Part shown: piece by piece, positions 1,419-63,779 of the stretch
Numbering within the stretch: position 1 is the stretch's first letter
Layout: every line of letters starts with the position of its first letter
NCBI GenBank assembly: GCA_002269645.1
Contig: NIVC01000665.1
Location: 186,001 to 250,000, forward strand
Reading direction: 5' to 3'
DNA from: Macrostomum lignano
Lineage: Eukaryota
Length of the DNA stretch: 64,000 nucleotides
Program-made: the position numbers and the translations under genes
Notes under the pieces: generated by a model
Told to the model about the DNA's origin: nothing
The model's database searches: none
The model's input: the letters and a program-made list of their open reading frames with translations, nothing else

Positions 1419-4400
1419 AGGAGGAGTGGGCGGTGGAGGTGCACACTGGCGACAAGCAGAGCGCCGGCACCGACGCCCGAGTCTTCCTGGCGCTCTATGG
1501 CGACAAAGGCAAATCAGACGAAATCTTCCTCGACTCTGTCCGAGACAGCTTCGAGCGCGGCAAGGTGGACAGCTTCCAGATTCACACGCCGTTGGTGGGG
1601 ACGCCGTTCAAAGTGCGGATCGGACACGACAACTCCGGGGCCGCGGCTGGCTGGTTCCTGGAGCGTCTGCTGATGAGGCGCACAGGTGACGGCAGCGACG
1701 ATGCGGGCTTCGAGTTCCAGTGCGGACGGTGGCTGGCCGAGAGCGAGGACGACAAGTGCATCGTGCGGGAGCTGCCGGCAGAGGGAAAAGGCATCAGGAG
1801 CGTCCTGCCAGGTGAGAGGGGGGCGTGGTTAAGTAGATAGTCATAAGTCTTCGTATTCGACACATTGCATGTGTATTTTGAAGGTGGCCTTCATAAACAA
1901 GTTTTTCTAGTCGTCCTTCATATTCTGACAGATTTCTGGATTTACCAGCCTTCATAAATCCAATCTTCCTAAATCGGCCTTCATAAATCGGCCTTGATAA
2001 ACCGGTTTCCATAAACCGGCCTTCATAAATCAGCCTTCATAAATCGGCCTTCAAAAATCGGTCTTCATAAACCGTCCTTTAAATCGACCTTTATAAATCG
2101 GCCTTCATAAAGCGACCTTCATAAATCGGCTTTAAAAATTGGCCTTCGAAGATCGGCTTTAAAACTCGATTCCTAAGAAGCCCCACTATCCATCTCGCGC
2201 TCTCATCCCGCAGTGCACAAGTACCATGTGCTGGTGAAGACAGGCAAGGTTCGCTACGCAGGCACGGACGCGAACGTCTACTGCAATCTGTTTGGCAGCA
2301 AATCCGACACTGGCAACCGGGCATTGAAATACTCAAGTTCTCACAAGAATCCGTTTGAGAAGGGCAATGTGAGTAAATCTTACTTTATTATTATTATTAT
2401 ATTGATTACAGCGCCGACACCTTAGCTACAGTTGGCGCCGACTCCTTAACTACAGTTGGTGCCGATTCCATTAGATTCATTTGGCGCCAATTCCTTAAAC
2501 TACAATTGACGCCCATTTCATTAGCTACAGTTGGCGCCGATTTCCTTAGCTACAGTTGGCGCCAATTTCATTAGCTACAATTTGGCCGATTCCACTAATT
2601 ACAGTTGGCGCCGATTTTATTAGCTACAGTTGGCGCCGATTTCATTAGCTACAGTTGGCGCCTATTTCATTAGCTACAGTTGGCGCCGATTTCATTAGCT
2701 ACAGTTGGCGCCGATTTCATTAGCTACAGTTGGCGCCGATTTCATTAGCTACAGTTGGCGCCGATTTCATTAGCTACAGTTGGCGCCGATTTCATTAGCT
2801 ACAGTTGGCGCCGTTTCCACTAATTACAGTTGGCGCCGATTTCATTAGCTACAGTTGGCGCCAATTTCATTAGCTACAGTTGGCGCCGATTTCATTAGAT
2901 TCATTTGGCGCCAATTCCTTAAACAACAATTGACGCCAATTTCATTAGCTACAGTTGGCGCCAATTTCATTAGCTACAATTTGGCCGATTCCACTAATTA
3001 CAATTGGCTCTGATTCCATTAGCTACAGTTGGCGCCGATTCCATTAGCTACATTTGGCGCCGATTCCATTAGCTACATTTGGCGCCGATTCCATTAGCTA
3101 CAGTTGGCGCCGATTCCACTAATTACAGTTGGCGCCGATTTCATTAGCTACAGTTGGCGCCAATTTCATTAGCTACAATTTGGCCGATTCCACTAATTAC
3201 AGTTGGCGCCAATTTCATTAGCTACAGTTGGCGCCGATTTCATTAGCTACAATTTGGCCGATTCCACTAATTACAATTGGCTCTGATTCCATTAGCTACA
3301 GTTGGCGCCGATTCCATTAGCTACAGTTGGCGCCGATTCCATTAGCTACATTTGGCGCCGATTCCATTAGCTACAGTTGGCGCCGATTCCACTAATTACA
3401 GTTGGCGCCGATTTCATTAGCTACAGTTGGCGCCAATTTCATTAGCTACAATTTGGCCGATTCCACTAATTACAATTGGCTCTGATTCCATTAGCTACAG
3501 TTGGCGCCGATTCCATTAGCTACAGTTGGCGCCGATTCCATTAGCTACATTTGGCGCCGATTCCATTAGCTACAGTTGGCGCCGATTCCACTAATTACAG
3601 TTGGCGCCGATTTCATTAGCTACAGTTGGCGCCAATTTCATTAGCTACAATTTGGCCGATTCCACTAATTACAATTGGCTCTGATTCCATTAGCTACAGT
3701 TGGCGCCGATTCCATTAGCTACAGTTGGCGCCGATTCCATTAGCTACATTTGGCGCCGATTCCACTAATTACAGTTGGCGCCGATTTCATTAGCTACAGT
3801 TGGCGCCAATTTCATTAGCTACAATTTGGCCGATTCCACTAATTACAATTGGCTCTAATTCCATTAGCTACAGTTGGCGCCGATTCCATTAGCTACATTT
3901 GGCGCCGATTCCATTAGCTACATTTGGCGCCGATTCCATTAGCTACAGTTGGCGCCGATTCCATTAGCTACATTTGGCGCCGATTCCTTAAACTACAGTT
4001 CGCGCCAATTCCAAATCAATTCGCGACAATATCAAGCATTTCCTGTCTACAGCGGCGTCACTCTCCGCCCAATCATCTTAGCTGGCCCGGGTTTCCAGTA
4101 CATTTCTTTGAGACAATCATATCAGTGACATCTGCGGCCTCAAAACAAGCTACATTGCAGCCTTTGATTGGCTATTTTTTACCCTAAAATTGTAGCAACT
4201 CAAACTAACCGGTTCCTGGGAAGCAACAGAGAACGAGATTATCACTATTAGATGTCATGCAACCGGTTTTGCTAGCAAGATATGGGAAGTCTGGTTTGGT
4301 TAAAGCAAGCCGCGTCATTTACCAGCTTAGTAGCGAATTCGACATTGAATCTGAGTCAAGAGAACTTTTATAGAGGGAACCTGAGAATCTCCTATTCTCC

Positions 4401-7400
4401 ACCTGAGAATCGCCCATTCCCCATTTGAGAATCGCCCATTCCACACCTGAGAATCGCCCATTCACCACCTGAGAATCGCCCATTCCCCACTTAAGAATCG
4501 CCCATTCCCCACTTGAGAATCGCCCATTCCCCACCTAAGAATCGCCCATTCTCCACTTGAGAATCGCCCATTCCCCACCTGAGAATCGCCCATTCCCCAC
4601 CTGAGAATCGCCCATTCCCCACCTGAGAATCGCCCATTCCCCACTTGAGAATCGCCCATTCCCCACCTGAGAATCGCCCATTCCCCACTTGAGAATCGCC
4701 CATTCCCCACCTGAAAATCGCCCATCCCCGACACCTGAGAATCGCTCCTCCAGACACCTGAGAATCGCCATCCCTGACACCTAAGAATCGCCCTTACCTG
4801 ACACCTGACAATCGCCCTTCCCTGACACCTGAGAATCGCTCTCCCTGACACCTGACAATCGCCCTGCCTGACACCTGAGAATCGCCCTCCCTGACACCTG
4901 ATAATCGCGCTCCCTGACACCTGAGAATCGCCCTCCCTGACACCTGATAATCGCCCTGCCTGACACCTGAGAATCGCCCTCCCTGACACCTGATAATCGC
5001 GCTCCCTGACACCTGAGAATCGCCCTCCCTGACACCTGACAATCGTCCTTCCCTGACACCTGAGAATCGCCCTCCCTGACACCTGACAATCGTCCTTCCC
5101 TGACACCTGAGAATCGCCCTCCCTGACACCTGACAATCGCGCTCCCTGAAACCTGAGAATCACCCTCCCTGACACCTGACAATCGTCCTTCCCTGACACC
5201 TGAGAATCACCCTCCCTGACACCTGACAATCGTCCTTCCCTGACACCTGAGAATCGCCCTCCCTGACACCTGACAATCGCGCTCCCTGAAACCTGAGAAT
5301 CACCCTCCCTGACACCTGAGAATCGCCCTCCCTGACACTTGAGAGTCGCTCTTTCACCGTCTTCCGTCACCTGAGATCCCATTGAAGAACGGAAGCTCTG
5401 CTCCCCGGTCCCGCAGGAGGACGAGTTCGTGCTCGAAGCGGTCGGACTCGGCAAGCGAATCGACAAAGTTCGCATCGGACACGACGGGAAGAACGCCGGC
5501 AGCGGTTGGTACCTGGACAAGGTGACCGTCTGGCGGGAGGACCAGCCCGATAATAAATTTGAGTTCATCTGCGACAGGTCAGTTTAATCTGCTTAGTTTT
5601 CTTTTTTCCTTGCATTCTTTGGAAACTAATCAGTTCACAATCACGTTGTATAATCCCCATCAATAACCTGTGCTGAGTTTTACTCAGTTTAATAAACCGC
5701 ATTGGTTCGCTACCTTTATTACAGGTGGCTGGATTCCAAAGAAGATGACGGCTGCATTGAACGGGACCTCACAGCTTCTGGAACCCTGCTGGACAGTGAG
5801 TTGCTGGAGACAAAAACTGCTTTCAAACTGATATCAAGAATCAGATCGCAATGTTAGAAACTGAGCACAACTCCAGAATCTCTGAGCACAACCCCAGAAT
5901 CTCTGAGCACAACCCTAGAATCTCTGAGCACAACCCTAGAATCTCTGAGCACAACCCTAGAATCTCTAAGCACAACCCTAGAATCTCTGAGCACAACCCT
6001 AGAATCTCTAAGCACAACCCTAGAATCTCTAAGCACAACCCTAGAATCTCTAAGCACAACCCTAGAATCTCTAAGCACAACCCCAGAATCTCTGAGCACA
6101 ACCCTAGAATCTCTGAGCACAACCCTAGAATCTCTGAGCACAACCCTAGAATCTCTGAGCGCAACCCCAGAATCTCTGAGCACAACCCTAGAATCTCTGA
6201 GCACAACCCTAGAATCTCTGAGCACAACCCTAGAATCTCTGAGCACAACCCTAGAATCTCTGAGCACAACCCCAGAATCTCTGAGCACAACCCTAGAATC
6301 TCTGAGCACAACCCTAGAATCTCTGAGCACAACCCTAAAATCTCTGAGCAGAACCCTAGAATCTTTGAGCGCAACAATAGAATCTCTGAGCACAACCCCA
6401 GAATCTTTGAGCGCAACAATAGAATCTCTGAGCACAACCCTAGAATCTCTGAGCACAACCCTAGAATCTCTAAGCACAACCCTAGAATCTCTGAGCACAA
6501 CCCTAGAATCTCTGAGCACAACCCTAGAATCTCTAAGCACAACCCTAGAATCTCTGAGCACAACCCTAGAATCTCTGAGCACAACCCTAGAATCTCTGAG
6601 CACAACCCTAGAATCTCTGAGCACAACCCTAAAATCTCTGAGCGCAACAATAGAATCTCTGAGCACAACCCTAGAATCTCTGAGCACAACCCTAGAATCT
6701 CTGAGCACAACCCTAGAATCTCTGAGCACAACTTTATAGAATCTCTGTGCTTATTCCAAGAATTTCCAATCTCAATCTCCAGAACCTGTGATAGAAATCC
6801 ACACAGTCAGCTCTAACTCTCACTCTCACTCCGCAGAGCTCACCTACAACGTGTCGGTGAAAACAGGCGACGTGTCAGGCGCCGGCACGGACGCGAACGT
6901 CTTTCTCAACATCTTCGGCGACAAAGGCGAAACTGGCGAACGCCAGCTGAAAGCCTCCGAGGCAGCTTTCAATAAATTCGAGCGGAACCGCACCGACCTG
7001 TTTCGGATTGAGAGTCCCGATATTGGAAAGGTGGGCGGCTGTTTTGGCTGGCATTAAACACTTCGCTGGAAGCTTTATTGTTTAATAGTCTATTTGTACA
7101 CCTGAGAACACTCTACTAGCGTGTACAAAACGACACCACCAAAGTCATACCACCACTCAGCACCAAAGGCACGCCACCACTCAGCATCAAAGCCACGCCA
7201 CCACTCAGCACCAAAGCCACGCCAACACTCAGCACCAAAGCTACACCAACACTCAGTACCAAAGCTACACCAACACTCAGCACCAAAGCCACACCACCAC
7301 TCAGCACCAAAGCCACACCACCACTCAGCACCAAAGCCACGCCAACACTCAGCACCAAAGCTACACCAACACTCAGCACCAAAGCTACACCAACACTCAG

Positions 7401-10400
7401 CACCAAAGCCACGCCAACACTCAGCACCAAAGCCACACCAACACTCAGCACCAAAGCCACACCACCACTCAGCACCAAAGCCACGCCAACACTCAGCACC
7501 AAAGCTACACCAACACTCAGCACCAAAGCTACACCAACACTCAGCACCAAAGCTACACCAACACTCAGCACCAAAGCCACACCAACACTCACCATCTAAG
7601 CTACACCTCCACTTGGCGCCGAAGACGCACCACAACCAACCTAATAAAACATCATCCCAACGTGACTCCGATCCCCAAATTCACCGCCAATCTCAGCTGG
7701 AGCGAATCCGAATTCGACACGACGGCTCGAACCCCAACGCCGGCTGGTTCCTGGACTGGGTGCGCATCGCAGTGCCATCGCAGGGCAAGCAGTACAACTT
7801 TGCGGCGCACCGCTGGCTCGACACCAACGAAGCGGACAGGAAGCTCGAGGTGGATATTGACCTTAGCGAAGTCACGGACATTGAGCACAGTGAGTTGAAC
7901 AGATAACGGATCGTTGCAGTGGACTGCTAGAACGATACCCAGACAGATTAGGGACCGAGTAGTGGTGAGGGTTCGATTCCGAATGCACATAAATTTGGGG
8001 TGTTCGTAACGGAAATTGACGACCATAGGGTTTGTCTCGTGATTTCCACCCATGAGAGCCAACCATCAAGCATGACTACTTGCCTCCTGGCCTTAGTTCC
8101 GAGGCTGTCCCTTTTCAAATGGACATTATAAGCATTCACTGCAACCATACGCCGCTCCGCTCCCTCGTCCAGCGATTCCCTACGAGATCATCGTCCAGAC
8201 TGGCAACTGCCAGGGCGCCGGTACGGACGCCAACGTGTTCGTGCAGATCTACGGCGAAGATGGCCTTAAAACTGAGCAGACTCCGCTGCGCTCGCGGTCC
8301 GACAACTTCGAGAAGGGCAAGCTGGAAAAGTTCAAGCTCGACCTGCTCGACGTCGGGCCAATTCAGAAACTTCGCATTGGCCACGACGGCACCGGCTTCG
8401 GCGATGGCTGGTTCCTTGATCACGTGATCATCCGGCGCCACGTCATGAAGGGCTCGAAGCGGCTCCGGGCGAGCCTCGCCAATGCTGGCCGACGCCGCAA
8501 GTCGAAAAAGGCGCCGGGCCACGACAGACGCGCAGAGGATGACGGCGATGAAGACGCTGATTACGGCGACTTCCAGTCGCGTCGGGCCTCGTCCGCCTCT
8601 GGACTGTCCTCCCGTCAGCGGCCGCGCTCCGCCGCCGGTCGAGGCAGCCTCAGAGCTGGCGGTCGCGGTGGCAAGAGGGACAAGAGAGCCGACGACTATG
8701 ACGATGAAGACGACTTTAATGACGGCTATGATGACGACAGGTGGTCCGACGATCGCAGTCGCAAAGGTCGTCGAGGCACCACGGCGTCCTCATCGCGGTC
8801 TCCCAGCGCTGCAGGCAGCACGCGCCATCGCCAGTCGGTTCGCTCTGCAGCTGGCGGCTCAAGCCGTCGCGGCAGTCGCTACACTAGCGACGACGACGAT
8901 GAAAACTACGACGAAGAATTCGACGACAGCGCGGACAACTTTGACGATCGTCGATCCGTGCAGTCGCGTCGAGCTAGCTCGGCAGCCGCCTCGCGTCGAC
9001 GATCCTCCGTGAGGTCCCCGTCAGTTTCTGGCCCCCGTCGCGGCGGTGGCAAAAACAACTACGACATCGACGAGGATGACCAAGACGATGCGGATAACTT
9101 CGACGCCAGGACGCGAGTAGGCGGCGGCGAGGACGATGGCGAGGAGGAGGTGGTGGAGGAGTACTGGTTCTACTGCAACCGCTGGCTCGCTCGGGACGAA
9201 GACGACAAGCTCATCGTGCGCGAACTGCTGCCGACCACCAAGGACGGCAAGCCTCTGTCGCGGCTCAGCGAGCTGGTCTACGAAGTCCGCGTGCAGACAG
9301 GCGACAAGCTGGGCGCCGGCACAGACGCAAACGTCTTCCTGACTCTCTTTGGCTCGGAGGCAGACTCAGGCGAGCGCGAGCTCAGCTCCAGCGAGACCCA
9401 TAGGAACAAATTCGAGCGCAAAAACGAGGACATCTTCAAGCTGAAAGCTGTCGATCTTGGCGAACTGCGCAAAGTGAAGATTCGTCACGACGATAAGGGT
9501 GGCGGCGCGGACTGGTATCTGGACCACGTGATCGTATTAGACCCCAAGGCCAAGCGTGAGGTGTACTTCCCCTGCCACCAGTGGCTGTCCACATCGAGGG
9601 ATGGAGGTCACATCTCGCGCGACCTGCTGGCGGTGGACAAGTCGCACATGGGCAAAGATGTGCACGAGAAGCTGAAACTGGAGAAGAAAGGTGAGCAACT
9701 GCTTATGACCTCGAACTGTACTTTGGTTTCATCTTCACTAAATATTAGTTGACTATTGAAAACCTACATGATTATTCACGTCACAGGTTTCGATCTGCTT
9801 TCTCTGCCTTTGAAACTCTTTAATAAATATTTTCCTAATCCCTTTCAGTTAATTGCAAAAAGGATTATTGAACATTAAATTTGTAACGCTTCTATATTTT
9901 CAGACACGACTGAAGCAGGTGAATTGTTTTTGAGTGCTTGATGACTAAAAAGGATTGATAAATAGATCGAAGCCCACCTAGATAAAGCAAGAGAATCTTC
10001 GCACTTTAATAGTCCTGAACATCATTAATTTTTGTTAAATCGCTCCCCAGCGGAGAGCCAACCGGGTCGATAAGTCAGTCAGAATATTCGCACACTGTTC
10101 GCACTGTTGATTTACTTATCGGCATGAAAGTCATTGGAAATTCCTGCATGTAAAACTCCCACGTTTGTACGGAACGACCTTCTAATACGCCCTTGAGTTT
10201 GCTTGTCATTGATATCGGAGTACTTTAATTTAGCTACTTGTATTTAACTAAATTTTGTAGACTAAGCAAAAACCAAAGGTGAGGTCAAAGGCAAAGTCTT
10301 CAGGTTCCAGTATTAACCGGATAATTTCATTTTTACTTTTGACACTTGGCATCTGTTTGGCAGACTTTCCTAGCTGTAGTTCTGGGGGTCTAGGGGCAGT

Positions 10401-13400
10401 TGATTGCGACAAATTGACTGCCAAGGCCATTGGGGCACCAAATAAGACCATGTAACGGGATTCGATTTCGTGCATGGCCACATCGATTCGTGCTCGCGCA
10501 CCAAGAGACAGAGTGTACGAGAGCCCCCTGCGAGCTAACCGAAGAAAGCCAGTGGCATTTAACTGGGATTAGTTTGACAATCTACTGCGACATTCTGTAT
10601 CTATGGATTCTTTACTCTCACCATGCCGCCGCTCAAAAATATCTTTATGATTTATCACCCTATCACCACCGCAGCCGCGTCCGAAACCTACCACGTGAAA
10701 ATTTACACTGGCGATGTTTATGGAGCCGGCACCGATGCCAACTGCCACATCGTCCTGTTCGGCGACTCGGGCGACTCAGGCGTAGTGCCGCTGCAGCGGA
10801 GTAAGACCTATTCGGACAAATTCGAGCGAGGCCACTGCGACGAGTTTGAAATCGAACTGGTGGACATCGGCGAACTGAAGAAAATCAAGCTGGGGCATGA
10901 CAACTCCAATCCCAGACCGGACTGGTACGTAGAAAAGGTTGAAATCGACTGTCCGAAGTTGGGCACCTCCTGGCTGTTCAATGTCGGCGAGTGGATTGGC
11001 AAGAGCAAAGGCGACGGCCAGTTGGAGAAGACGCTGTACCCGCAGCAGGGCGCAACCAGGATTTACGCCAACCGTGAGTCCAAGAGTGCATAGAAGCGGA
11101 CTGGCCTCAGTGCCTCAGTGTAGCGCAATCTGAAATGGCCTTGGTCTCAGCTCTCACGGTTCGCAACTGTGTTTCTACCGTAATTCAGAGCTGCTGCTAC
11201 CGTGTCATAGCGGTTACGGGGGTTGGACAAGGATCCCCTCTATGGTGTGATTCCGCGTCCGTCCGCCTCAACGTTCATTTCATAGAAGTTAGGGCCACTG
11301 TACACACTGTGTGAGCGCGTTTCGAACTCTCAATGGAGTCAAACCAATCCAGCCTATATATAAGTTGTGCTCAACTATGCTTTGGTAAAGACTAAAGGCT
11401 TTGATAAGTCACTGGCGACAGGGACGTACGAGGTCAGAGAGTCAATAAAATAACCTTACCCGTCAATCAACAACAGGTGTGCCATACGAGATCACGACCT
11501 ACACGTCGGACAAGAGCGGCGCAGGCACCAGCGCCAATGTGTTCATCCAGATCTACGGCAGGGAGACTCAGACGGAGCAGAAGCTGCTCTGTTCCAAGAC
11601 CGATCGGTCAGGAAAATTCAAACGAGGCAGCGTAGACAAATTTGTGCTGGAGGTGAGCGCCGGGGATTGACCGCTCTGGCTGGACTTTTTAAGGGATTTT
11701 TTATTGTATTTAATTTTCCATAGAAAAGGGATCAGGCTCAATCAGATTTGTAGCTTCAGTTTGTAGCTGCAACTGGTAAAATCCTGTCTATCGGCTAGGA
11801 AACATGACTTAATAGATGGTGTGTATAACAGGTAACAACCTGTCTAAAATGTAGTACTTTGTCCAGCAAGTAACACCTAACATGTATCTAGCAGTCTCTT
11901 TTCTTATCTATCAGGTGACGCACCTCTAGCACCGAAGATCCTGTCTAAGAAGCAGTCATCTGTCTAACACCTTTCTATTTGGGCTCAAAAGGTTTATTTA
12001 TGGCAGTTATATTCATATCATAGTTCACGCACCGCCCGATTGTGCCCAATTTTTCCTATCCAGCTTGAAGACGTGGACGACCCGATTGAAAAGATTCGCA
12101 TCGGCCACGACGACGAGGGCCTTCGATCTGGCTGGCACCTGGACAAGGTGGAGATCAGAAAGTTCATCGAGGGCAAGGTAGGTACAAGTAGTTTTTTAAG
12201 CAAAGCTACAGTATGTATCTCTATAGAAATGTATTTTTAGCACTGTAGGGGGTCGAATTTCCAACCCTGCATTTTTGACCCTATCACAACGGATTTAAAT
12301 TGAGCTCTAGCTTGAGAGGGATGACGATGACTTTGGTTGACTTGCAGACACTGAGCTAACAACTGGCGCTATTGTACCTCATCTGGTACTTCTGGTACAA
12401 CGCAATAGAACAGCTAACAAAAAGCAGTTACACAATCGCATCAACTACGCCTCCCCAATATCCCTGGCAGACCTCGGTCACCTACGTGTTCCCATGCGGC
12501 CACTGGCTGGCCCGGGACGAAGAGGACCACGAGATCGTGCGCGAACTCGTGCCCAGCAAAGTGATTGAGGAAGACGACCGAATCGGCGGCAAAGGCAAGC
12601 GCCGCGAAAAAGATATGAAAGGCTCGCTGAAGAAGAAGACCTACAAGGTTCACGTGTTCACCGGGGACAAGAGTGGCGCCGGGACCAACGCCGACGTTTT
12701 CCTGACGGTCTTTGGCGAGAAAGGCGATACTGGCGAGCGCGAGCTCATCAACTCGGAGACGTACACGGACAAGTTTGAGAAGGGCCACGAGGACATCTTC
12801 ACCTGGGAAGCTGTTGACCTGGGCAAGCTTTACAAGATCAAAATCAGGCACAATGACAAGGGCTTCTTCTCCGACTGGTTCCTCGACCATGTCGAAGTGC
12901 ACGACACCGCGACGGGCGAGAAAACGTCGTTCTTTGCCGAGCGCTGGCTGTCCAAGAAGAAGGAGGACAAGAAGCTGCAGGTGACGGTCTATGCCCAGGG
13001 CTATGAGGGTGACATGGCCTCGTCCGCTTCCAGCATGCGCAGCCTGGGCTCGAGTCTCAGCGGTGTTGAGCGGGACAAGAGTCCTCGTGGCAGTTTGAGA
13101 AGAGCCTCGTCAACGTTGGAAAAAATTGCTGAGGGGCCGAGTGAGTTCTGAGCTTTTAAAACTTGGCGTTGAGTTACACATTAGTTGTTTGAATTACACA
13201 GAGAACAATCTCTATGACAGACAGAGTAATTCGCATGACAGGTGACTATTAATCTCCTTGAGATCTAATCGGACCTTCCCATTGTAACCCCGCCCCTCAG
13301 CCGGTGACTACAACATCACGTTCACCACTGGCCGAGCGAAGGGCGGCACCGCCACGGAGGGTCCAATCTGGGTGCGACTGTACGGCTACCAGCCGCCGAC

Positions 13401-41600: not shown

Positions 41601-42631
41601 GGAAACCGTCACCTCTGCCAACATCATCAAGACGCTTCGGAAGCTATTCGGCCGGTGGGGAGTCCCGAAGATGCTGATCAGCGACAACGGACCCCAGTTC
41701 GTCAGCGACGAGTTCGAAGAGTTCCTGCGAGCCGAGGGCACCAAGCACAGCCGAGTGAGCCGGTACTACCCGCAAGGCAACGGCGGAGTCGAGCGATTCA
41801 ACCGGAGTCTGAAGGAGGGCCTGGCAGCGAACCTGAGGGCGGGAGCGAAGTTCGAGGACGCTATCGACCTGGTGCTCAAGACCTACAGGACCAGCCAGCA
41901 CGCTCTCACCGGGCTGACTCCAGCCGAGCTGATGATCGGGCGCAAGCTGCGGTCCGGACTGCAGCTGCTCAGGCCAACTCCAGTGCAACAGCGGGACGAC
42001 AGCGACCTGCGAGACAGTATCGCACAGAGGCAAGCCAAGAATGCCGACTACACCAACAAGCGAAGGCGAGCTCGTGACTCTATGCTCCAGGCCGGAGACT
42101 GGGTCTGGCGACAGACGCCGCACCGAGCGCACAAGCTGGCGACCCGACTGAAGGAACCGCTAAAGATCGCCTCCAAAGCAGGGCGCAACACCTTCGTGCT
42201 GTCCGACGGTACAAAGTGGCAAGCGAGTCGGCTGGTTAAGTGCAACAGCCCACCGGCTGACAACGGCGCGGCCGACCAAGAGGACGACTGGTTCGATTTG
42301 CCGCTGCCGCCGGCTCCGCCCCCACGGACGGGCGAGCCGCCACCTCCACCTGAACTTCGAAGGTCAACTCGAGCTCGACGGCAACCGGCGCGTTATCCTC
42401 TTCCGGAAGGGGGGAGAATGTAGTGACTGTGCATCAGGCCTAGGTGTTGTAACTAACTAACTTTGAGGCTAGAATTGTTCAATTACCTTATATGCATCGT
42501 GCGTTCAATCATGGTATCGTTGTTTCGATTGCGTAACACTGTTTTCAACGTGCACATGAGTATAAATATATTGAGCGAGACTCAAGTGTCTCCAACTGAA
42601 TTGAATTTAATCAATCAACTAGAACACAACA
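38649..42631 (+). mobile_element. Ty3/Gypsy LTR retrotransposon (Mag-like), 3983 bp
   Basis: LTRs 38649-38861 and 42419-42631 (213 bp, TG...CA, identical by eye). 5 bp TSD TTCCG. PBS TGGCGACGAG at 38864-38873. PPT GGAAGGGGGGAGAA at 42405-42418. Confidence 0.97.
38863..42423 (+). CDS. Single-ORF Gag-Pol polyprotein (1186 aa): Gag, CCHC knuckle, aspartic protease, RT, RNase H, integrase
   Basis: CRRCGKTNHFAKMC knuckle; QIDCGAAVS protease; KLDLRQGYQQ...VPFGL...NIVDDIL RT; CDAS...TDHKAL...ADMLSR RNase H; IDIFG...SDNGPQF...NGGVERFNR integrase core. PR-RT-RH-IN order is the Ty3/Gypsy order. Confidence 0.96.
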   Translation: MATSGLPYPAEFQPVPGEPPVPWARWIKSFENFLVAGALEEASESRKKAILLHLLGEEGRRRAANVDASKSLQETKKALKAIFSSSRSVIAERFAFRQRAQHDGESIGDYVMALRELATNCKFDTFHDEMIRDQLVEKTCVPRIRERLLMEEDDLTLDDAIKKAERIEAAIKDAKQVSGPELHVKALSKKPKPAARHEKTAAAGPKCTRCGGNHGHKGECKAMGQKCRRCGKTNHFAKMCRMKAVSAIDTKEPAESSLTVLAVNNKSTDSLFCECRLGGQLIRLQIDCGAAVSLLNMETFKKSFARHPLLPTSTKLEAYGGSAIKTIGKVELPVTFNGIRTEATFYVADKGANILGRDLFQALGFKIFQGDNRVMSISETTIERDFPGIFDGLGRSKSFIHRTKIDASVKPVSQPMRKLPIGLKDEVTSEISRMEQQGIIEKVDASEWVSNVVVTRKKESNKVRLCVDLRQVNKAVIADRYPVPSIEDLSASINGSKCFSKLDLRQGYQQIPLHPDSRGLTCFITDAGLYQFTVVPFGLSSSGAAFQRALQTVLRGAPGAINIVDDILVHGKDETEHDKNLREVLGRIHREGFTLNREKCKFRQASVDFFGLVISADGIKPTKCNVDAILRIPEPSTVAQIQSFLGAVNFLHKFIPHYSAIAEPLRQLLKKDADWHWGERERTAFRTLKSAVTSSPVLAHFDCQAETYVTCDASLDGLGAVLSQVQNEKEVPIAFASRALSPAEKRYSAGEREALACVWSIERWHYYLYGRRVTLRTDHKALTTLLDSKGMGHRPLRIHRWVERLRGYDVRFEHIPGADNKCADMLSRWATTERVPAEETDVEDYVKNCTACTLAEKSGKPQQTIVTPIEWPDGPWDKVEIDIFGEVAAAPRHQRFLLVIHDLYSKWPEIAAMETVTSANIIKTLRKLFGRWGVPKMLISDNGPQFVSDEFEEFLRAEGTKHSRVSRYYPQGNGGVERFNRSLKEGLAANLRAGAKFEDAIDLVLKTYRTSQHALTGLTPAELMIGRKLRSGLQLLRPTPVQQRDDSDLRDSIAQRQAKNADYTNKRRRARDSMLQAGDWVWRQTPHRAHKLATRLKEPLKIASKAGRNTFVLSDGTKWQASRLVKCNSPPADNGAADQEDDWFDLPLPPAPPPRTGEPPPPPELRRSTRARRQPARYPLPEGGRM

Positions 42632-42714: not shown

Positions 42715-42997
42715 CTGGCGCACTTTAAGCGACATTGCCACACAACCACAACCACGTACGCAGTCATACGCACAGGCACACACTCACACAGGAGTGTACA
42801 GCGGCCCTAACTTTATTTATCGTTAGGCATGTACACTTCACTGCGCCTTGGGGGGTTGGCTCTCAAGGGCATTAATTGCACGAGCAGAGCCAAGCCGAGA
42901 TTCCAATTTAGTCACAAATTAATGTGACTGCACTTGGAATCGAGCCTGGACCGCTGGCACATCAGAGCGCCGCGCTGGACCACTAAGGTTACGGCCC
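42715..42997 (-). mobile_element. tRNA-derived SINE, copy A
   Basis: Minus-strand head GGGCCGTAACCTTAGTGGTCCAGCGCGG...GGCTCGATTCC (A- and B-box-like); homologous over its length to 44107-44416. Confidence 0.72.
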
Positions 42998-44106: not shown

Positions 44107-44416
44107 CCTGGCGCACTCTAAGCGACATTGTCACACAACCGGCGAGAGGCATTGCTGCCCATTCCGCCGACTCCCCTGAGCAGGCATACAAGCGCGCGGA
44201 TACGTACGCAGTCATACGCACAGGCACACACTTTATTGAACGATAGGCATGTACACTTCACTGTGCCTTGGGGTTTGGCTTTCAAGGGCGTTAACTGCAC
44301 GAGCAGAGCCAAGCCGAGATTCCAATTTAGTCCCAAATTAATGACTGCACTTGGAATCGAGCCTGGGCCGCTGGAATATCAGAGCACTGCGCAGGACCAC
44401 TGGGATACGCGCCCCC
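44107..44416 (-). mobile_element. tRNA-derived SINE, copy B (lacks the core block, has a ~45 bp extra segment)
   Basis: Head GGGGGCGCGTATCCCAGTGGTCC...GGCTCGATTCC; body homologous to copy A. Confidence 0.72.
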
Positions 44417-45102
44417 AGGCTACTGCATAATCAGTTCAGGAATTTCGTGTTAGTAAATAACCCCAAATTAATGAGCTCCCTGCTCACTAATGTTTTTCCA
44501 AGACGCAATCTCTTTTCTGAGCTCAAGTTCCAGCATCCACTCGCTAGCATAAACAGATACTGGTATTTTTTAGGGAAAAGTCGGGAAGGACTCCCACTGG
44601 AATCGCACCAGAGTCGGCTTTTGTCCAGCTTCTGGAAGGGTGCAGAGATATGCCATTGATCAAGCAGTCACCAACAGCCGGACTGGACACCCCCAAACCG
44701 CCGGTGCTTTGGCTGCAAGGCGCATTTTATCCAAACAGTTTTTCAAACGAGCTCAACTTTCGCCGGAAATGCCGGATTAGCAGAGTGCAGCAGGAAACAT
44801 TTTCTAGCAACAACTTTTCAACCCAGCGTCCGATTAAAACCCAGCCCTGCATCATCGCTTCAGCTAGAATTGATGAGGTCCCGGCAATTTTCGCTGTTCC
44901 GAAACCGGTCCGCCCCGGCAACCAGACTTTTTAATTGCCGCTGCAGGCAGCGGAGCGGATGAAGCGAATTTCGCTATAAATTCGAGACGGACTGCTCGCG
45001 AAGCCGGGATCGAACTCGAATTGTCTCAGCGACTCCTCCAGGTTCCGCAGCTGTCCCTCCACCCGGTTCTGCTTGCCAAACAAATCGAGACAGACAAAAA
45101 GC

Positions 45103-46757
45103 ATGCGTCTTCTGTTGGTTGCCATGGGCATCGCGCTCTGCATCTCGCAGATGCACCGTGAGGTGAGACAAATTTATCAAAATGCCTCAAATTCGATTTT
45201 TTGAGTTAAAGTGGACTTCCGTAGCCTTAAAATCGCACCCCCCCCCTACAGTCTGATGCGCGAGCTCTCAAGCGTCAAGCCTACGACGTAGGCTACTCCG
45301 ATAGCGTCATGTCGTCGAGCTTCGACGATATGAAGAGGGAAGACTCAATTTTCGATGAGTACGATGATCAGGACGACGAAGGGGGCCTGTTTGGCAGACG
45401 GAAGAAGGAGGACGATGAGGAAGATGAAGAGAGCGAGGATAGGAGGAAGCGACAGGACGATGAGGAAGATGAAGAAGAGGAGTATGAGGAGGAGGAGGAA
45501 GAGGAAGAGGAGACCGAGGACAGGAGGAAGCGACAGGATAATCGAGTAGAACAGGAGGAGGTCGAAGAGATTATAGAGGAGATTGAAGAAGAGGTGGAGG
45601 AGATCCGAGAAGAGGAGTATGAGGAGGAAGAGGAGGAGGAGGAGAACTACGACAAGAGGAAGAAGCGACAGGACGATGAGGAAGATGAGGAAGAGGAGTA
45701 TGAGGAGGAAGAGGAGGAGGAGGAGAGCTACGACAGGAGGAAGAAGCGACAGGACGATGAGGAAGATGAGGAAGAGGAGTATGAGGAGGAAGAGGAGGAG
45801 GAGGAGAACTACGACAAGAGGAAGAAGCGACAGGACGATGAGGAAGATGAGGAAGAGGAGTATGAGGAGGAAGAGGAGGAGGAGGAGAGCTACGACAGGA
45901 GGAAGAAGCGACAGGACGACGAGGAAGATGAGGAAGAGGAGTATGAGGAGGAAGAGGAGGAGGAGGAGAACTACGACAAGAGGAAGAAGCGACAGGACGA
46001 TGAGGAAGATGAGGAAGAGGAGTATGAGGAGGAAGAGGAGGAGGAGGAGAGCTACGACAGGAGGAAGAAGCGACAGGACGATGAGGAAGATGAGGAAGAG
46101 GAGTATGAGGAGGAAGAGGAGGAGGAGGAGAACTACGACAAGAGGAAGAAGCGACAGGACGATGAGGAAGATGAGGAAGAGGAGTATGAGGAGGAAGAGG
46201 AGGAGGAGGAGAGCTACGACAGGAGGAAGAAGCGACAGGACGACGAGGAAGATGAGGAAGAGGAGTATGAGGAGGAAGAGGAGGAGGAGGAGAACTACGA
46301 CAAGAGGAAGAAGCGACAGGACGATGAGGAAGATGAGGAAGAGGAGTATGAGGAGGAAGAGGAGGAGGAGGAGAGCTACGACAGGAGGAAGAAGCGACAG
46401 GACGACGAGGAAGATCAGGAAGAGGAGTATGAGGAGGAAGAGGAGGAGGAGGAGAACTACGACAGGAGGAAGAAGCGACAGGACAACGAGGAAGATGAGG
46501 AAGAGGAGTATGAGGAGGATGAGGAGGAGGAGGAGGAGGAGAGCGAGGACAGGAGGAAGAAGCGACAGGAGGACGAGGAAGATGAAGAATACGAGGAGGA
46601 CTACGACAGGAAGAAGAAGTATAGTGACATGGACTTCTATGACGAGGACATCGAGTCCAACCTGGACCAAGAATTTTTCGGCCGGAGGAAGAAGGAGGAT
46701 GACCAGGACGAGGATGAGGACTATAAGAGGAGGAAGCGGGCCAGGCGTTCGGTCTAG
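45103..46757 (+). CDS. Secreted polyacidic tandem-peptide precursor (prohormone-like, 521 aa)
   Basis: Exon 1 45103-45162 (MRLLLVAMGIALCISQMHRE, GTGAG donor). Exon 2 45252-46757 (CCCCTACAG acceptor, phase 0, in frame with the 482 aa ORF). Ten 81 bp/27 aa units plus variants, each ending in (K/R)RKKR. Two G-RRKK amidation-type sites. Confidence 0.85.
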
Positions 46758-47459
46758 GGGAATCAGCGGAGATCCGCGCGAGTCAGTACGTTAAAGGAAC
46801 TGACCGACAAGAGCTGCAGGCTTCACACTGGACTGAAACCGTCTTGCCCCGATCTTATTAACTTAAAGCATGCACCAATGCTTCAAGACTATGTTTGGCG
46901 CCTAGAGCCTATTAAAAACATTTTTGACAGTAAAACTAAAATATATAATTGTAACATCCCGAAAAATGCGACAAAACGAACGATTTTAGTGATAAACTAG
47001 CTAAAGTTTTGCCCCCCTTCGGGGAGCAGAAATAATTAATATTCGTCTAATATAATATACCTTTTAGCAGGAGTACTTTAAGTGTTTTTCTTAAGCTTAA
47101 GCTTAAAATAGGAATTTTTGGAGATCGTTAATAACGCATTTTAGGTAAAACAAAACTATCAACTTTTTACAGTTTTTAGTTTAGAGCCCTGTATATGTCA
47201 ACGTGTTTGATAAAAATTATTTTTATCATTTTTGATAAAAAATGGCCTTCGGGGTGGCCAATAAGCAAGGGACGAATCCTTTTAAATGAAAAAAAATTCT
47301 TAGGGAGGGGGGCTAGGAATCGAATTCTCATTTTAATTCCAGGCTTATGTACCAATAAAACATGTTTGTGCAGAATTTTATAACAGACATTGAAATTCAA
47401 CCATACTTGCCTTCTTTCAGAGCTACTTCTACCAGTATGCTTCAGTACGCTACCAGTAC

Positions 47460-48400
47460 CCTTGTAAGCCTTGACATGTCAGCAATCCCCCCCACAAGCC
47501 TTAACATATCAACTCCCCCCTTGACATCTCAGCAATGCTCCCACAAGCCTTGAAATCTTAAAAAATCTGTCTATTTTCTAACCCTAACCCTAACCCTAAC
47601 CCTAACCCTAAAGCATTGAAATTTCAGTAATTCTCTCTAAGAGTCTATAGCACTACTACAGCATTATAGCGATTCCCTGCAAGCCTCGACATCGTAGGGA
47701 TTCCCAAATGAATCTCTTAACTTTGACATGAAGCTTCTTTTTTTTTTACATTACGCTTTTTCTATCAGCGATCCCTCCCGTGAGGAGCCAACAAATAATG
47801 TAATAACTTTTTTCCAATAAACTACATGTAGCTTCTGACATTAGCCTTGACATCTCATTTATTCCCCCGTGAGCCTTGACATCTCAGCTATAGATAGATA
47901 GATAGATTCCCCTCGTAAGCCTTGACATGTCAGCGATGCCCCCCATAAACCTTGAAATCTAAAAAATCCCCTGTTAACCTTGAAACGCGCTAAAATCTAA
48001 CCCTCAACCCAAACCTGACGTAAACCTAACTTTCACCCAACCTAAAGCCTTGAAATCACAGCAATTCTTCTTCCCTAAGCCTTGGCATTTAAGTGATTCC
48101 TTCTTTAAGAATCACAGCACTATAACGATTCCCTCCAAGCTTTGACATCGTAGCAATTCCCAAATGAATCTTTTAACTTTGACATGACTTTTATTTTATG
48201 TATACATAGTGCTCCTTTTATTTTTACATGACTCTTCTTCTATCAGCGCCCCCCCCACCGTGGCAAGCCAACAAAGAATGCAATAAAAAACTTAAGTAAA
48301 GTACATGTACTTTGAAGTAGCTTCTGACTTTTGCTTTAACATCTCAGAAACCCCCTGTAATCTCAGTTATTCTCTGTGAGCCTTGACGTCTCAGTAATTC
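47460..48400. repeat. Degenerate ~450 bp tandem duplication built on AAGCCTTGACATCTCAGCAATTCCCC-type units, including a (TAACCC)5 tract at 47579-47608
   Basis: Shared landmarks such as TTCCCAAATGAATCT..TAACTTTGACATGA at about 47700 and 48158; the same unit family occurs at 1283-1330. Confidence 0.65.
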
Positions 48401-62014: not shown

Positions 62015-63656
62015 ATGCTGGCATTTCTGGCGGCAGCAGCGGCAGTGCTGCTAAGCCTGCCGCAGGCGGCACTGCAGTGCCAGTACCGCAACGGCTACAT
62101 TTTCGAATGCGGTCACAACCAGCTGAGCAGGATGTCCCAGCTGCGCGGACCCCTGCCCGATGGTGTCACAGTGCTGGACATTTCCTACAACAGATTTGAC
62201 CAGCTGGACCCAGCCTACTTGGTGGAGCAGTTCCCCGGAGTGCAGCAGGTGCTGGCAGTGGACAACAGAATTACCAGACTGCTGCTGAATACCGATGCTC
62301 AAACTACTTGGCCGCAGTTGAGACTGCTCAGGCTGAGCAGGAACCGGCTGGAATCGATCAGCCGAGACGAGTTCTCATTCGGCACAGGCCTGGAGACGCT
62401 GCATTTCGACAACAATCGGTTGCAGAGTCTCAACAGGGGCTGCTTCAGCCGGTGTCACAATTTGAGTTTGCTCAATCTGGCGCACAATAATCTGGACTTT
62501 CTGCACTCGGATTACTTCTGGGGTGAGCATTGCGGCTTACTGAACCGGTTAAGGGGGGGGGCTGTAGCCTAGTGGTCAGAGCGTCGGACTCACAACTTGA
62601 AAGGTCGGGGGTTCGATTCCAGATCCACTAGAACAATTTGTGTCTAATATCTAAATATTGCACACAATAAAGTGCATCAGAATCTTCTACATCCGCACAG
62701 GCCTGTGGAGCCTTCAACGACTCCAGCTCAGCCACAACCAGCTCACCGGACTGTCCAGCGACGCCCTCGGCCACCTGCACAGCCTGAAAGCGCTGGACCT
62801 CAGCCACAACCGCATCAAGTCCCTGTCAGCCTCCGCTCTCCAGGGCCTGCCAAGCCTGTCCAGACTCAGCCTCGCAGGAAACCAGCTGACGGAGTTCCCG
62901 ATGGACGCGCTGAAACCGTCGCAGTCCCTGCTGCACCTGGACCTGTCGGGCAACCTCCTGACTGACCTGTACCCCGGCACCGTCACTCAGCTGGCCGCGC
63001 TCGAGAGACTGCTGCTGAACAACTCCGAGGAGTTGCAGCTCATCGATGCCGGAGCTTTCCAACGCCTGCCGCGACTGCGCCTGCTGGACGTCACCGACAG
63101 TCGCCGGCTGGTGTACATCAGCGCCAATGCATTTGTCAACTGTCCTCGTCTGGCGAAACTGCGACTGACCGGCTGCCCGCTGGCTGTCGCTCCGCTGGCG
63201 GACTGGCGACGAAACTCGCCGAAGATCAGCTCGATCGATATCGCCGAGGCGACACCCACCGGGGCTCCTGGCTCTGGCGGTGGCGGCGGCGACGTCATGG
63301 TGATGGACCTGTTCCCGGCCGAGATCGTGCTGTCCGAGGGCCACCGGCTCAGGCTGCCTTGCCGCTCTTATCCGGAAGGTCGGGCCAGCTGGCGGCTGCC
63401 CGCCGGTCTGGCGGCTGGCCGCTTCGCTGGAGGCGGCGAGCAGAGGCGACATCTACGGCATCACGTGACCGTCACTCCGCAGCAGGACCTGCTGCTGCAC
63501 GACGCCTTTGACAAGCTGAGCGGCACATATGCCTGCGTTGCCGACGAAGAAGTCAACGCGACCGCCGAGCATCCAGCGGAGAGCTTAGGGCGGCCGCTGA
63601 GACGAGAGGTTGCCATCAGCGTCAAACGGCTGGAGAGCCGGCTGCTGCTGTTGAAG
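62015..63656 (+). CDS. LRR-Ig cell-surface protein, LRRN/NLRR-like; 3'-partial
   Basis: Exon 62015-62522 (signal peptide MLAFLAAAAAVLLSLPQAALQ, LRRNT-like cap, LRRs) and exon 62701-63656 (LRRs, then an Ig domain LPCRS...W...LLL...GTYAC). Phase 1 intron; GTGA donor at 63657. LLLNNSEELQLIDAGAFQRLPRL...DSRRLVYISANAF resembles LRRN C-terminal LRRs. Confidence 0.85.
62553..62626 (+). mobile_element. tRNA-derived SINE head or tRNA pseudogene in the LRR-gene intron
   Basis: A-box-like TAGCCTAGTGG, B-box GGTTCGATTCC and a CT-CAC-AA loop, but weak anticodon-stem and acceptor-stem pairing. Confidence 0.6.
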
Positions 63657-63779
63657 GTGAAGAACAGACAGAGAGACACTAAGACACGATGACGCATATC
63701 GATAGACAGAAGAAACGGTAGGAACATACAGATGGAAAGTCGGAAAGACACTAAAATGGTTTCTAGATTAGAATTAAGA

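What the first reader, a model, noticed from the sequence alone, without database searches (positions are those of the whole stretch)
45103..46757. Secreted precursor that would release about 12 extremely polyanionic peptides
Seen: a spliced signal-peptide exon, then ten tandem 27 aa units QDDEEDEEEEYEEEEEEEE(N/S)YD-(K/R)RKKR plus flanking variants. Established: R-x-K-R and dibasic sites are furin/prohormone-convertase targets; N-terminal Gln cyclises to pyroglutamate; Tyr in acidic context is the tyrosine-sulfation consensus. Predicted product: a 22-mer with 18 acidic residues and two sulfatable Tyr, made in many copies per precursor. In typical neuropeptide precursors acidic stretches are spacers; here they are the amplified, protected product. 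Inference: a heparin-like polyanion secretion system. If the host is Macrostomum, it is a candidate for the unidentified negatively charged releasing factor proposed to counter its Lys/Arg-rich adhesive. Alternatives are Ca2+ chelation or mineralisation, granule packaging, or a seminal or mucus component.
Basis: partly seen in the sequence, partly recalled or inferred. Interest (0 to 1): 0.85.

Follow-up and report, generated by a model that had tools for sequence, protein, structure and literature searches.

The report
Flatworm secreted precursor of polyacidic peptides
A real, spliced gene of the flatworm Macrostomum encodes a secreted precursor built to be cut into about 14 extremely acidic peptides plus two amidated ones; nothing like it was found in any other organism, and where it is expressed and what it does are still unknown.

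Summary
A two-exon gene (45103-45162 and 45252-46757) encodes a 521-aa protein. It has a signal peptide and ten near-identical 27-aa units, QDDEEDEEEEYEEEEEEEE(N/S)YD-(K/R)RKKR, with older variant units on both sides. A public Macrostomum lignano entry (UniRef100_A0A1I8IM69) carries exactly the predicted exon junction. That supports the splice and places the window in M. lignano or a very close relative.

Two related flanking peptides end in F-G-RRKK, the classical amidation signal. The array is almost mutation-free (0-3 differences per 162 bp) in a window that is 37% tandem repeat, so the amplification is recent and cannot be read as selected.

No homologue was found among 1.84 billion representative proteins. 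There is no Pfam domain, and the UniProt name "ANP32-like" only reflects the acidic composition.

The best reading is a convertase-processed secretory polyprotein that yields polyanionic peptides. The role as adhesive releasing factor is untested. Published evidence leans against it: releasing vesicles hold PAS-positive polysaccharide and little protein or nitrogen. The main rival reading is a prohormone whose acidic spacers have expanded.

The parts
44975..44981 (+). TATAAAT box, candidate core promoter
   Evidence: Read from the sequence. The public model P0010 begins at 45004 although its frame is open from 44980. This puts the transcript 5' end at about 45002-45004, 27-29 nt after the first T of the TATA box. 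The promoter role is inferred.
45004..45102 (+). 5' UTR
   Evidence: Residues 1-33 of P0010 are the in-frame translation of this stretch. Across residues 1-53 (45004-45162), 52 of 53 are identical.
45103..45162 (+). Exon 1 coding part: signal peptide MRLLLVAMGIALCISQMHRE
   Evidence: Basic n-region (MR) followed by a 12-residue hydrophobic core; the Kyte-Doolittle 11-residue mean peaks at 2.9. The likely cleavage site CIS|Q is inferred from the -3/-1 rule. The exon is present in P0010.
45163..45251 (+). Intron, 89 nt, GT..AG, phase 0
   Evidence: GTGAGA donor, C-rich tract and CAG acceptor. The intron is removed in P0010.
45252..45338 (+). Pro-region: SDARAL-KR-QAYDVGYSDSVMSSSFDDM-KR
   Evidence: Translation. 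Two KR sites; the first is followed by Gln.
45339..45407 (+). Predicted amidated peptide 1, EDSIFDEYDDQDDEGGLF-G, plus RRKK
   Evidence: Gly followed by a basic cluster is the amidation signal (established knowledge of the amidating enzyme PAM). Paralogous to peptide 2.
45408..45668 (+). Older, divergent acidic units (EDDEEDEESED-RRKR; QDDEEDEEEEYEEEEEEEEETED-RRKR; QDNRVEQEEVEEIIEEIEEEVEEIREEEYEEEEEEEENYD-KRKKR)
   Evidence: P0010 lacks 15 aa here (SEDRRKRQDDEEDEE), an in-frame indel variant.
45669..46478 (+). Ten tandem 81-bp (27-aa) units: 22-mer polyacidic peptide plus (K/R)RKKR
   Evidence: TRF; unit-by-unit comparison shows 0-3 differences per 162 bp.
46479..46619 (+). Divergent acidic units QDNEEDEEEEYEEDEEEEEEESED-RRKKR and QEDEEDEEYEEDYD-RKKK
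46620..46694 (+). Predicted amidated peptide 2, YSDMDFYDEDIESNLDQEFF-G, plus RRKK
   Evidence: This region together with the tail that follows it aligns to 45357-45452 at 50% identity over 36 aa, E 9e-8.
46695..46757 (+). C-terminal tail EDDQDEDEDY-KRRKR-A-RR-SV and TAG stop
46911..46916 (+). ATTAAA, candidate polyadenylation signal 154 nt after the stop codon
   Evidence: Pattern search. The role is inferred only.

Best explanation
This is a gene so far found only in Macrostomum. It has a TATA box and two exons, and it encodes a polyprotein of the secretory pathway.

Proposed sequence of events:
1. The signal peptide takes the protein into the ER.
2. In the trans-Golgi and secretory granules, furin or prohormone convertases cut after each R-x-K-R or dibasic cluster (21 clusters).
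3. Carboxypeptidase E/D-type enzymes trim the basic residues.
4. The N-terminal Gln found after 14 of the clusters cyclises to pyroglutamate.
5. Tyr in the EEEEYEEEE context is sulfated.
6. The two F-G-RRKK sites are converted to Phe-amide.

The output would be ten 22-mers with 18 acidic residues each, four or five related polyacidic peptides, and two acidic amidated peptides of 18 and 20 residues.

The proposed action is physicochemical. The peptides would form a dense, soluble, exopeptidase-resistant polyanion that binds Ca2+/Mg2+ and polycationic partners, either inside the granule as a counter-ion or outside after release from a gland cell.

Shown here: the gene structure, the splice, the motifs and the species. 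Inferred: every processing step, the cell type and the target.
For: - Gene structure and splice are matched by the public M. lignano model P0010 / A0A1I8IM69.
- The signal-peptide exon is unlikely to arise by chance (14 of 20000 shuffles).
- All 12 repeat-unit clusters read (K/R)RKKR, so R sits at P4, K at P2 and R at P1. This is the furin consensus R-x-K/R-R (plus established convertase specificity).
- Gln follows 14 of the 21 basic clusters. One of these is the non-repeat site ARALKR|QAYD. The divergent old units also keep the Gln.
- Two Gly-plus-basic amidation signals make sense only in the secretory pathway.
- The central Tyr in an acidic context is kept in all divergent units.
- M. lignano has a PC2 homologue with an RNAi phenotype (PMC4490696).
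- The TATA box lies 27-29 nt before the 5' end of the public model, which is typical of tissue-specific secretory genes.
Against: - There is no peptide, protein or expression evidence of any kind.
- The repeat units are too young to show purifying selection.
- No orthologue is available, so conservation of the sites cannot be tested.
- Acidic P1'/P2' residues (Q-D-D) are not ideal for furin (from my own knowledge).
- The second Tyr (N/S-Y-D-K/R) sits next to basic residues and is a weaker sulfation site.
- The acidic blocks could be mere spacers for the two amidated peptides.
Confidence: 0.5

Rival explanations
1. It is an ordinary neuro- or endocrine prohormone. The bioactive products are the two amidated peptides (…GGLF-NH2 and …QEFF-NH2). 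The polyacidic units are spacers that expanded recently by unequal crossing-over in a genome prone to minisatellites. At most they would help granule sorting and Ca2+-dependent condensation, as granins do.
For: - Two paralogous F-G-RRKK-EDD… modules flank the array. The short acidic segments after them (EDDEEDEESED, EDDQDEDEDY) look like the seed of the repeat unit.
- Array units differ by 0-3 nt per 162 bp, and higher-order 162/324-bp periods indicate recent unequal exchange.
- 37% of the window is tandem repeat.
- An in-frame 15-aa indel separates the window from the public model.
- Acidic spacers are the norm in neuropeptide precursors (established knowledge).
Against: - About 75% of the precursor would be spacer.
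- Every unit keeps a full furin site, an N-terminal Gln and a central Tyr, including the older diverged units. Pure spacers would not need these.
- The amidated peptides are themselves very acidic (8-9 acidic residues in 18-20) and match no known neuropeptide motif. There was no Pfam hit and no homologue.
Confidence: 0.28
2. One reading: the peptides are the unidentified small, negatively charged releasing factor of the duo-gland adhesive organ. They would be discharged from releasing-gland vesicles and compete with the anchor-cell surface for the Lys/Arg-rich repeats of Mlig-ap1.
For: - The source is M. lignano or a very close relative.
- The releasing factor was still unidentified in 2019-2022 papers, and none of the literature searches here found a later identification.
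- Heparin and Fondaparinux block attachment, while Lys, Arg, a KR peptide and MgCl2 block release (PMC6410801). A secreted polyanion would account for all of this.
- The 22-mer (2.8 kDa, 18 acidic residues) is of the same order of size and charge as Fondaparinux (from my own knowledge).
- Releasing vesicles measure about 100 nm, similar to peptide-containing dense-core vesicles.
Against: - The same papers report PAS-positive polysaccharide and low protein density in M. lignano releasing vesicles, and low nitrogen in those of Minona. This points to a carbohydrate. A caveat, which is my inference: poly-Glu carries 2-3 times less nitrogen per unit mass than the KR-rich adhesive used as the comparison.
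- There are no expression data, and the worm has many other gland and nerve cell types.
- No orthologue was detected outside Macrostomum, although duo-gland release is found across flatworms. The databases appear to contain few flatworm proteins.
Confidence: 0.08
3. It is an intracellular acidic nuclear protein, as the automatic UniProt name suggests ([quoted passage not shown]). Translation would start at Met 45309 without the signal peptide, and the KRKKR clusters would act as nuclear localisation signals.
For: - An ORF starts at the ATG at 45309.
- KRKKR fits the classical monopartite NLS pattern (established knowledge).
- Acidic tracts occur in histone chaperones.
- The UniRef name.
Against: - No LRR or any other Pfam domain.
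- The public model contains the signal-peptide exon spliced in frame.
- The Gly-plus-basic amidation motifs and the Gln after each cluster have no meaning in the nucleus.
- The name is explained by compositional similarity alone.
Confidence: 0.04
4. It is a young orphan gene whose repeat expansion is selectively neutral. It would be transcribed and perhaps secreted, but without a specific selected function for the polyacidic peptides.
For: - No homologue in 1.84 billion representatives or 5.8 billion clusters.
- The array is nearly free of mutations.
- The genomic context is rich in tandem repeats.
- An indel variant exists.
Against: - A coherent set of secretory-processing motifs is kept in both old and new units.
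- There are a TATA promoter and an intact 1.5-kb reading frame.
- The two flanking modules have diverged (50% identity) yet both keep F-G-RRKK. This suggests constraint over a longer time.
Confidence: 0.1

Closest known systems
Multi-copy neuropeptide or peptide-hormone precursors processed by prohormone convertases (e.g. FMRFamide, enkephalin and TRH precursors)
   Same: A signal peptide, tandem peptide copies separated by basic cleavage sites, Gly-basic amidation signals, and N-terminal Gln that can form pyroglutamate.
   Different: In those precursors the repeated unit is a short receptor ligand and the acidic stretches are spacers. Here the repeated unit is the acidic stretch (82% D/E), and the only amidated peptides are single-copy flanks. 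No sequence homology was found.
Granins (chromogranin A/B, secretogranins)
   Same: Acidic secretory proteins with poly-Glu tracts, many dibasic sites and sulfated Tyr. They bind Ca2+ with low affinity and high capacity and condense granule cargo. This is a plausible functional analogue.
   Different: No match to the Pfam Granin family or to any other family. Granins are not built from tandem units with a furin site at each unit.
Fungal Kex2-processed repeat proteins (yeast alpha-factor precursor, Ustilago Rep1 and other KEPs)
   Same: The same architecture: a signal peptide followed by many tandem repeats, each ending in a Kex2/furin-type site, released as many small peptides.
   Different: The kingdom and the cargo differ (pheromones or hydrophobic wall peptides, not polyanions). 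There is no homology.
Gastrin / CCK / sulfakinin peptides
   Same: pGlu, a poly-Glu run, a sulfated Tyr in acidic context and a C-terminal Phe-amide, as in gastrin-17 (from my own knowledge). This resembles the two flanking peptides.
   Different: The defining C-terminal motif (Y-G-[WH]-M-[DR]-F-NH2) is absent. The peptides here end in GGLF and QEFF.
ANP32 acidic nuclear phosphoproteins (the name on the UniRef entry)
   Same: A long Glu/Asp-rich low-complexity region.
   Different: No LRR domain, and a spliced signal peptide and secretory processing motifs are present. It is not a member.
Heparin and Fondaparinux as experimental inhibitors of Macrostomum attachment
   Same: Small soluble polyanions. 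The predicted 22-mer has a comparable size and charge.
   Different: Those are sulfated carbohydrates added from outside. The natural factor is unknown, and histochemistry suggests polysaccharide.

Membership tests
Convertase-processed secretory peptide precursor (generic class) | N-terminal signal peptide | tested here: met
   MR followed by a 12-residue hydrophobic core and a small -3/-1 pair (CIS|Q). The 11-residue hydropathy mean peaks at 2.9; a chance equivalent appeared in 14 of 20000 shuffles. No dedicated signal-peptide predictor was available.
Convertase-processed secretory peptide precursor (generic class) | Repeated dibasic or R-x-K/R-R cleavage sites bounding the peptides | tested here: met
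   21 basic clusters; 12 read (K/R)RKKR.
Convertase-processed secretory peptide precursor (generic class) | Gly-basic amidation signal | tested here: met
   …GGLF-G-RRKK and …QEFF-G-RRKK.
Convertase-processed secretory peptide precursor (generic class) | Processed peptides detected, and expression in secretory or neuronal cells | not testable with these tools
   No peptidomic or expression data were reachable. Supplement searches of PMC5977470 and PMC4490696 found nothing.
ANP32 (acidic leucine-rich nuclear phosphoprotein 32) | N-terminal leucine-rich-repeat domain | tested here: not met
   Pfam scan of the collapsed precursor returned 0 families at E <= 0.01.
Granin family | Homology to the Pfam Granin family, which represents chromogranin A/B | tested here: not met
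   No Pfam hit. No homologues by phmmer except the same gene.
Gastrin/CCK/sulfakinin | C-terminal Y-G-[WH]-M-[DR]-F-amide motif | tested here: not met
   The peptides end in DEGGLF-G and LDQEFF-G.
Macrostomum releasing factor (functional category, not a sequence family) | Small, negatively charged, secreted molecule | tested here: met
   By prediction only: 2.8-kDa peptides with 18 acidic residues from a signal-peptide precursor.
Macrostomum releasing factor (functional category, not a sequence family) | Produced in releasing gland cells and required for detachment | not testable with these tools
   No expression or RNAi data. Published vesicle chemistry (PAS-positive polysaccharide, low protein or nitrogen) leans against a peptide.

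The most novel reading that the evidence does not exclude
The polyacidic pGlu/sulfo-Tyr 22-mers are the long-sought small negatively charged releasing factor of the flatworm duo-gland adhesive organ. Alternatively, they are the granule counter-ion that keeps the polycationic adhesive Mlig-ap1 condensed. Either way, this would be a genetically encoded, peptide-based heparin mimic produced by convertase cleavage of a tandem-repeat polyprotein.
Probability: 0.1. Interest if true: 0.9.

Novelty: new variant of a known kind. Interest (0 to 1): 0.55.

Why it matters
If the predicted processing occurs, this would be an unusual use of the prohormone-convertase system. It would mass-produce a polyanion rather than a receptor ligand, giving a peptide counterpart of heparin encoded directly by a gene. 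I found no described precedent, but the literature search for one was limited.

In Macrostomum it also gives a concrete candidate, testable by RNAi, for an open question: what makes the temporary adhesive let go. That question interests people designing reversible glues. Published histochemistry makes this particular role unlikely, though not excluded.

If it is not the releasing factor, the gene is still a clean case of a lineage-restricted secreted protein created by recent coding-minisatellite expansion. It also shows that the database name "ANP32-like" is wrong.

Tried and rejected
- **Full-precursor search:** The search for homologous proteins with a repeat-collapsed precursor hit 8000 candidates and none scored. 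The poly-Glu words had probably saturated the candidate list. A re-run with only the non-repeat ends found just P0010.
- **Exact look-ups:** the 482-aa ORF, the retrotransposon ORF and P0010 were not on record in the contig collection. No RNA-seq contigs or sample accessions could therefore be obtained.
- **Species identification via the PLAT gene:** only 33-40% identity hits came back (Rotaria, an unnamed EukProt entry), and cluster look-up added no names. The species came from P0010 instead.
- **The four other phmmer hits** (E 6e-7 to 5e-4) are unrelated repeat proteins and were rejected on inspection.
- **Rfam scan of the window:** nothing.
- **Bacterial promoter/terminator scan:** irrelevant for a eukaryote.
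- **Paralogues:** none in the window.
- **Literature:** searches for a later identification of the releasing factor, for releasing-gland transcripts, for M. lignano neuropeptide lists and for known polyanionic multi-copy precursors found nothing relevant. The Lengerer 2018 tail in situ screen is not held in the library. Supplements of Weber 2018 and Arbore 2015 contain no matching annotation or sequence.
- **Other reading frames:** the Arg-rich +2 frame (45583-46794) and the Leu-rich minus-strand ORF (45345-46670) are by-products of the GAG/GAA-rich repeat. Neither has gene features, and P0010 supports the acidic frame.

Full report
**1. What is in the sequence**

The region was read directly and the proposed coding sequence was assembled.
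- An ATG at 45103 opens a 60-nt exon encoding MRLLLVAMGIALCISQMHRE.
- The exon ends at a GAG|GTGAGA donor (45162/45163).
- After an 89-nt intron with a C-rich tract, a CAG| acceptor (45251/45252) joins in phase 0 to an open frame that runs to the TAG at 46755-46757.
- The product is 521 aa with 296 Asp+Glu and 96 Lys+Arg.

Tandem Repeats Finder reports an 81-bp unit with 12.0 copies, 95% matches and score 1761. Cut in register, ten 27-aa units occupy 45669-46478. Nine are exactly QDDEEDEEEEYEEEEEEEE(N/S)YD(K/R)RKKR. The tenth has one E>Q change. Older, diverged versions lie on both sides, at 45408-45668 and 46479-46619. Each 22-mer has 18 acidic residues, two Tyr and no basic residue, and weighs about 2.83 kDa.

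**2. Is the gene real, and whose is it?**

An exhaustive phmmer search of the exon-2 translation against 1.84 billion representative proteins gave one true hit, P0010 (159 aa, E 1e-37). The other four hits were unrelated repeat proteins.

P0010 is UniRef100_A0A1I8IM69 from Macrostomum lignano. Its sequence is the in-frame translation of the 5' UTR from 45004 (52 of 53 residues identical over 45004-45162). It then reads MRLLLVAMGIALCISQMHRE joined directly to SDARALKRQAYD…. That is the predicted 45162/45252 junction in an independent public model.

P0010 differs from the window by one residue in the UTR translation and by an in-frame 15-aa deletion in the first acidic units, and it breaks off inside the repeats. 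It therefore looks like a fragment from another allele, homeologue or strain. The window is thus M. lignano or a very close relative.

The P0010 frame is open from 44980, yet the model starts at 45004. This places the transcript 5' end 27-29 nt after a TATAAAT box at 44975-44981. An ATTAAA lies 154 nt after the stop codon.

A signal-peptide-like ORF with an in-phase GT donor arose in only 14 of 20000 shuffles of the upstream 320 nt.

**3.

(a) Two flanking peptides end in Phe-Gly followed by RRKK: EDSIFDEYDDQDDEGGLF-G and YSDMDFYDEDIESNLDQEFF-G. Gly followed by basic residues is the classical signal for C-terminal amidation. The two modules, together with the short acidic segment after each, are paralogous (50% identity over 36 aa, E 9e-8). 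The precursor therefore has the hallmarks of a conventional prohormone as well.

(b) The array is almost free of mutations. Successive 162-bp double units differ by 0-3 nt, and there is a partial 324-bp periodicity.

(c) The window is extraordinarily rich in tandem arrays: 38 merged arrays cover 37% of the 64 kb.

The tenfold amplification is therefore recent and is the kind of event this genome produces readily. It cannot by itself be read as selection for many copies.

**4. What supports the acidic units being more than spacers**

The diverged, older units keep three features:
- a full R-x-K/R-R or tetrabasic site;
- a Gln immediately after the site;
- a central Tyr embedded in Glu.

Gln follows 14 of the 21 basic clusters, including the non-repeat site ARALKR|QAYD. 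Because the units share ancestry, this is modest evidence. Orthologues would be needed to settle the question.

**5. Most likely mechanism (inferred from motifs and established pathway knowledge)**

1. The signal peptide directs ER entry.
2. Furin or prohormone convertases cleave after the basic clusters.
3. Carboxypeptidases trim the basic residues.
4. N-terminal Gln cyclises to pyroglutamate.
5. Tyr is sulfated in the EEEEYEEEE context.
6. The two Gly-extended peptides are amidated.

A PC2 homologue with a strong RNAi phenotype is known in M. lignano (PMC4490696). The products would be about 14 polyacidic peptides plus two acidic amidated peptides. I take their action to be physicochemical: binding of divalent cations and polycations, either as a counter-ion inside the granule or after release. 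My confidence in this overall picture is about 0.5. None of the processing steps has been observed.

**6. The adhesion hypothesis**

The literature confirms the premise. Wunderer et al. 2019 showed that heparin and Fondaparinux block attachment. They also showed that Lys, Arg, the SRKPRRKNRKSRKP peptide and MgCl2 hinder release, and they proposed a small negatively charged releasing factor acting on the KR-rich Mlig-ap1 (PMC6410801). The factor was still unidentified in 2021-2022 papers (PMC8621496, PMC9229212). The searches here found no later identification.

The same paper, however, reports PAS-positive polysaccharide and a low density of protein in releasing vesicles. In Minona the nitrogen content of releasing vesicles is low (PMC6745481). 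This leans towards a carbohydrate.

One caveat, which is my own inference: poly-Glu carries two to three times less nitrogen per unit mass than the Lys/Arg-rich adhesive used as the comparison.

I could obtain no expression data. Exact look-ups for contigs failed. The supplements of two M. lignano expression screens held no match. The key tail in situ screen is not in the library. I put this specific hypothesis at roughly 0.08-0.1.

**7. Rival readings**

- **Prohormone with expanded spacers (0.28).** The two amidated peptides would be the active products.
- **Neutral young orphan gene (0.1).**
- **Nuclear acidic protein, as the UniRef name "ANP32-related" implies (0.04).** This last is contradicted by the absence of any LRR or other Pfam domain and by the spliced signal peptide in the same UniRef entry.

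**8. Comparison with known systems**

In architecture this is a multi-copy convertase-processed precursor, like FMRFamide or TRH precursors or the fungal Kex2-processed repeat proteins. Its cargo is inverted: the repeated element is the polyacidic stretch.

In function the nearest analogues are the granins (acidic, sulfated, Ca2+-binding, rich in dibasic sites), but no homology was detected. The flanking peptides recall gastrin or sulfakinin in general style but lack the defining C-terminal motif.

No homologue exists in the two protein collections searched. I therefore class it as a new variant of a known kind. The gene fragment was already in UniProt, uncharacterised and misnamed.

**9. Verdict**

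- Interest is 0.55. The gene is real and unusual, it lies in the right organism for an open question, and ordinary experiments can test it. Its function is unknown, and the most exciting reading is disfavoured by published vesicle chemistry.

Noticed in passing
window 1-64000: 37% of the window (38 merged arrays, 23.7 kb) is tandem repeat, with periods from 4 to 199 bp. Several arrays have periods divisible by 3 and create long spurious ORFs in all frames.
   Followed up: partly
window 38649-42631: An apparently intact, very young Ty3/gypsy-type LTR retrotransposon lies about 2.4 kb upstream of the gene. Identical 213-nt LTRs (38649-38861 and 42419-42631) flank a 1186-aa gag-pol ORF with zf-CCHC, RVT_1, RNase H and integrase domains.
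   Followed up: partly
window 1433-15343 (+): A large multi-exon gene is made of repeated PLAT/LH2 domains, with minisatellite arrays in its introns. One exon (8235-9752) carries a long acidic/Ser-Arg low-complexity insert. The best database relatives are only 33-40% identical.
   Followed up: partly
window 21980-22800 (-): Exons of an EF-hand (calmodulin-like) gene lie directly next to long (GACA)n/(TGTC)n arrays.
   Followed up: no
window 42760-42984 and 44180-44401: Two copies of a dispersed repeat of about 225 nt (71-93% identity) lie between the retrotransposon and the gene's promoter. It may be a short interspersed element.
   Followed up: no
window 47578-47611: An interstitial telomere-like repeat, (CTAACC)5.7, which is the complement of TTAGGG, lies about 0.8 kb downstream of the gene.
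   Followed up: no
window 62015-63692 (+): Two exons of a leucine-rich-repeat protein. The first begins with a signal-peptide-like N-terminus (MLAFLAAAAAVLLSLPQA).
   Followed up: no
window 45408-45452 compared with P0010: The public M. lignano model lacks 15 aa (SEDRRKRQDDEEDEE). This fuses the first two acidic units and removes one cleavage site. It is an in-frame length variant between alleles or homeologues, or a collapse in short-read assembly.
   Followed up: partly
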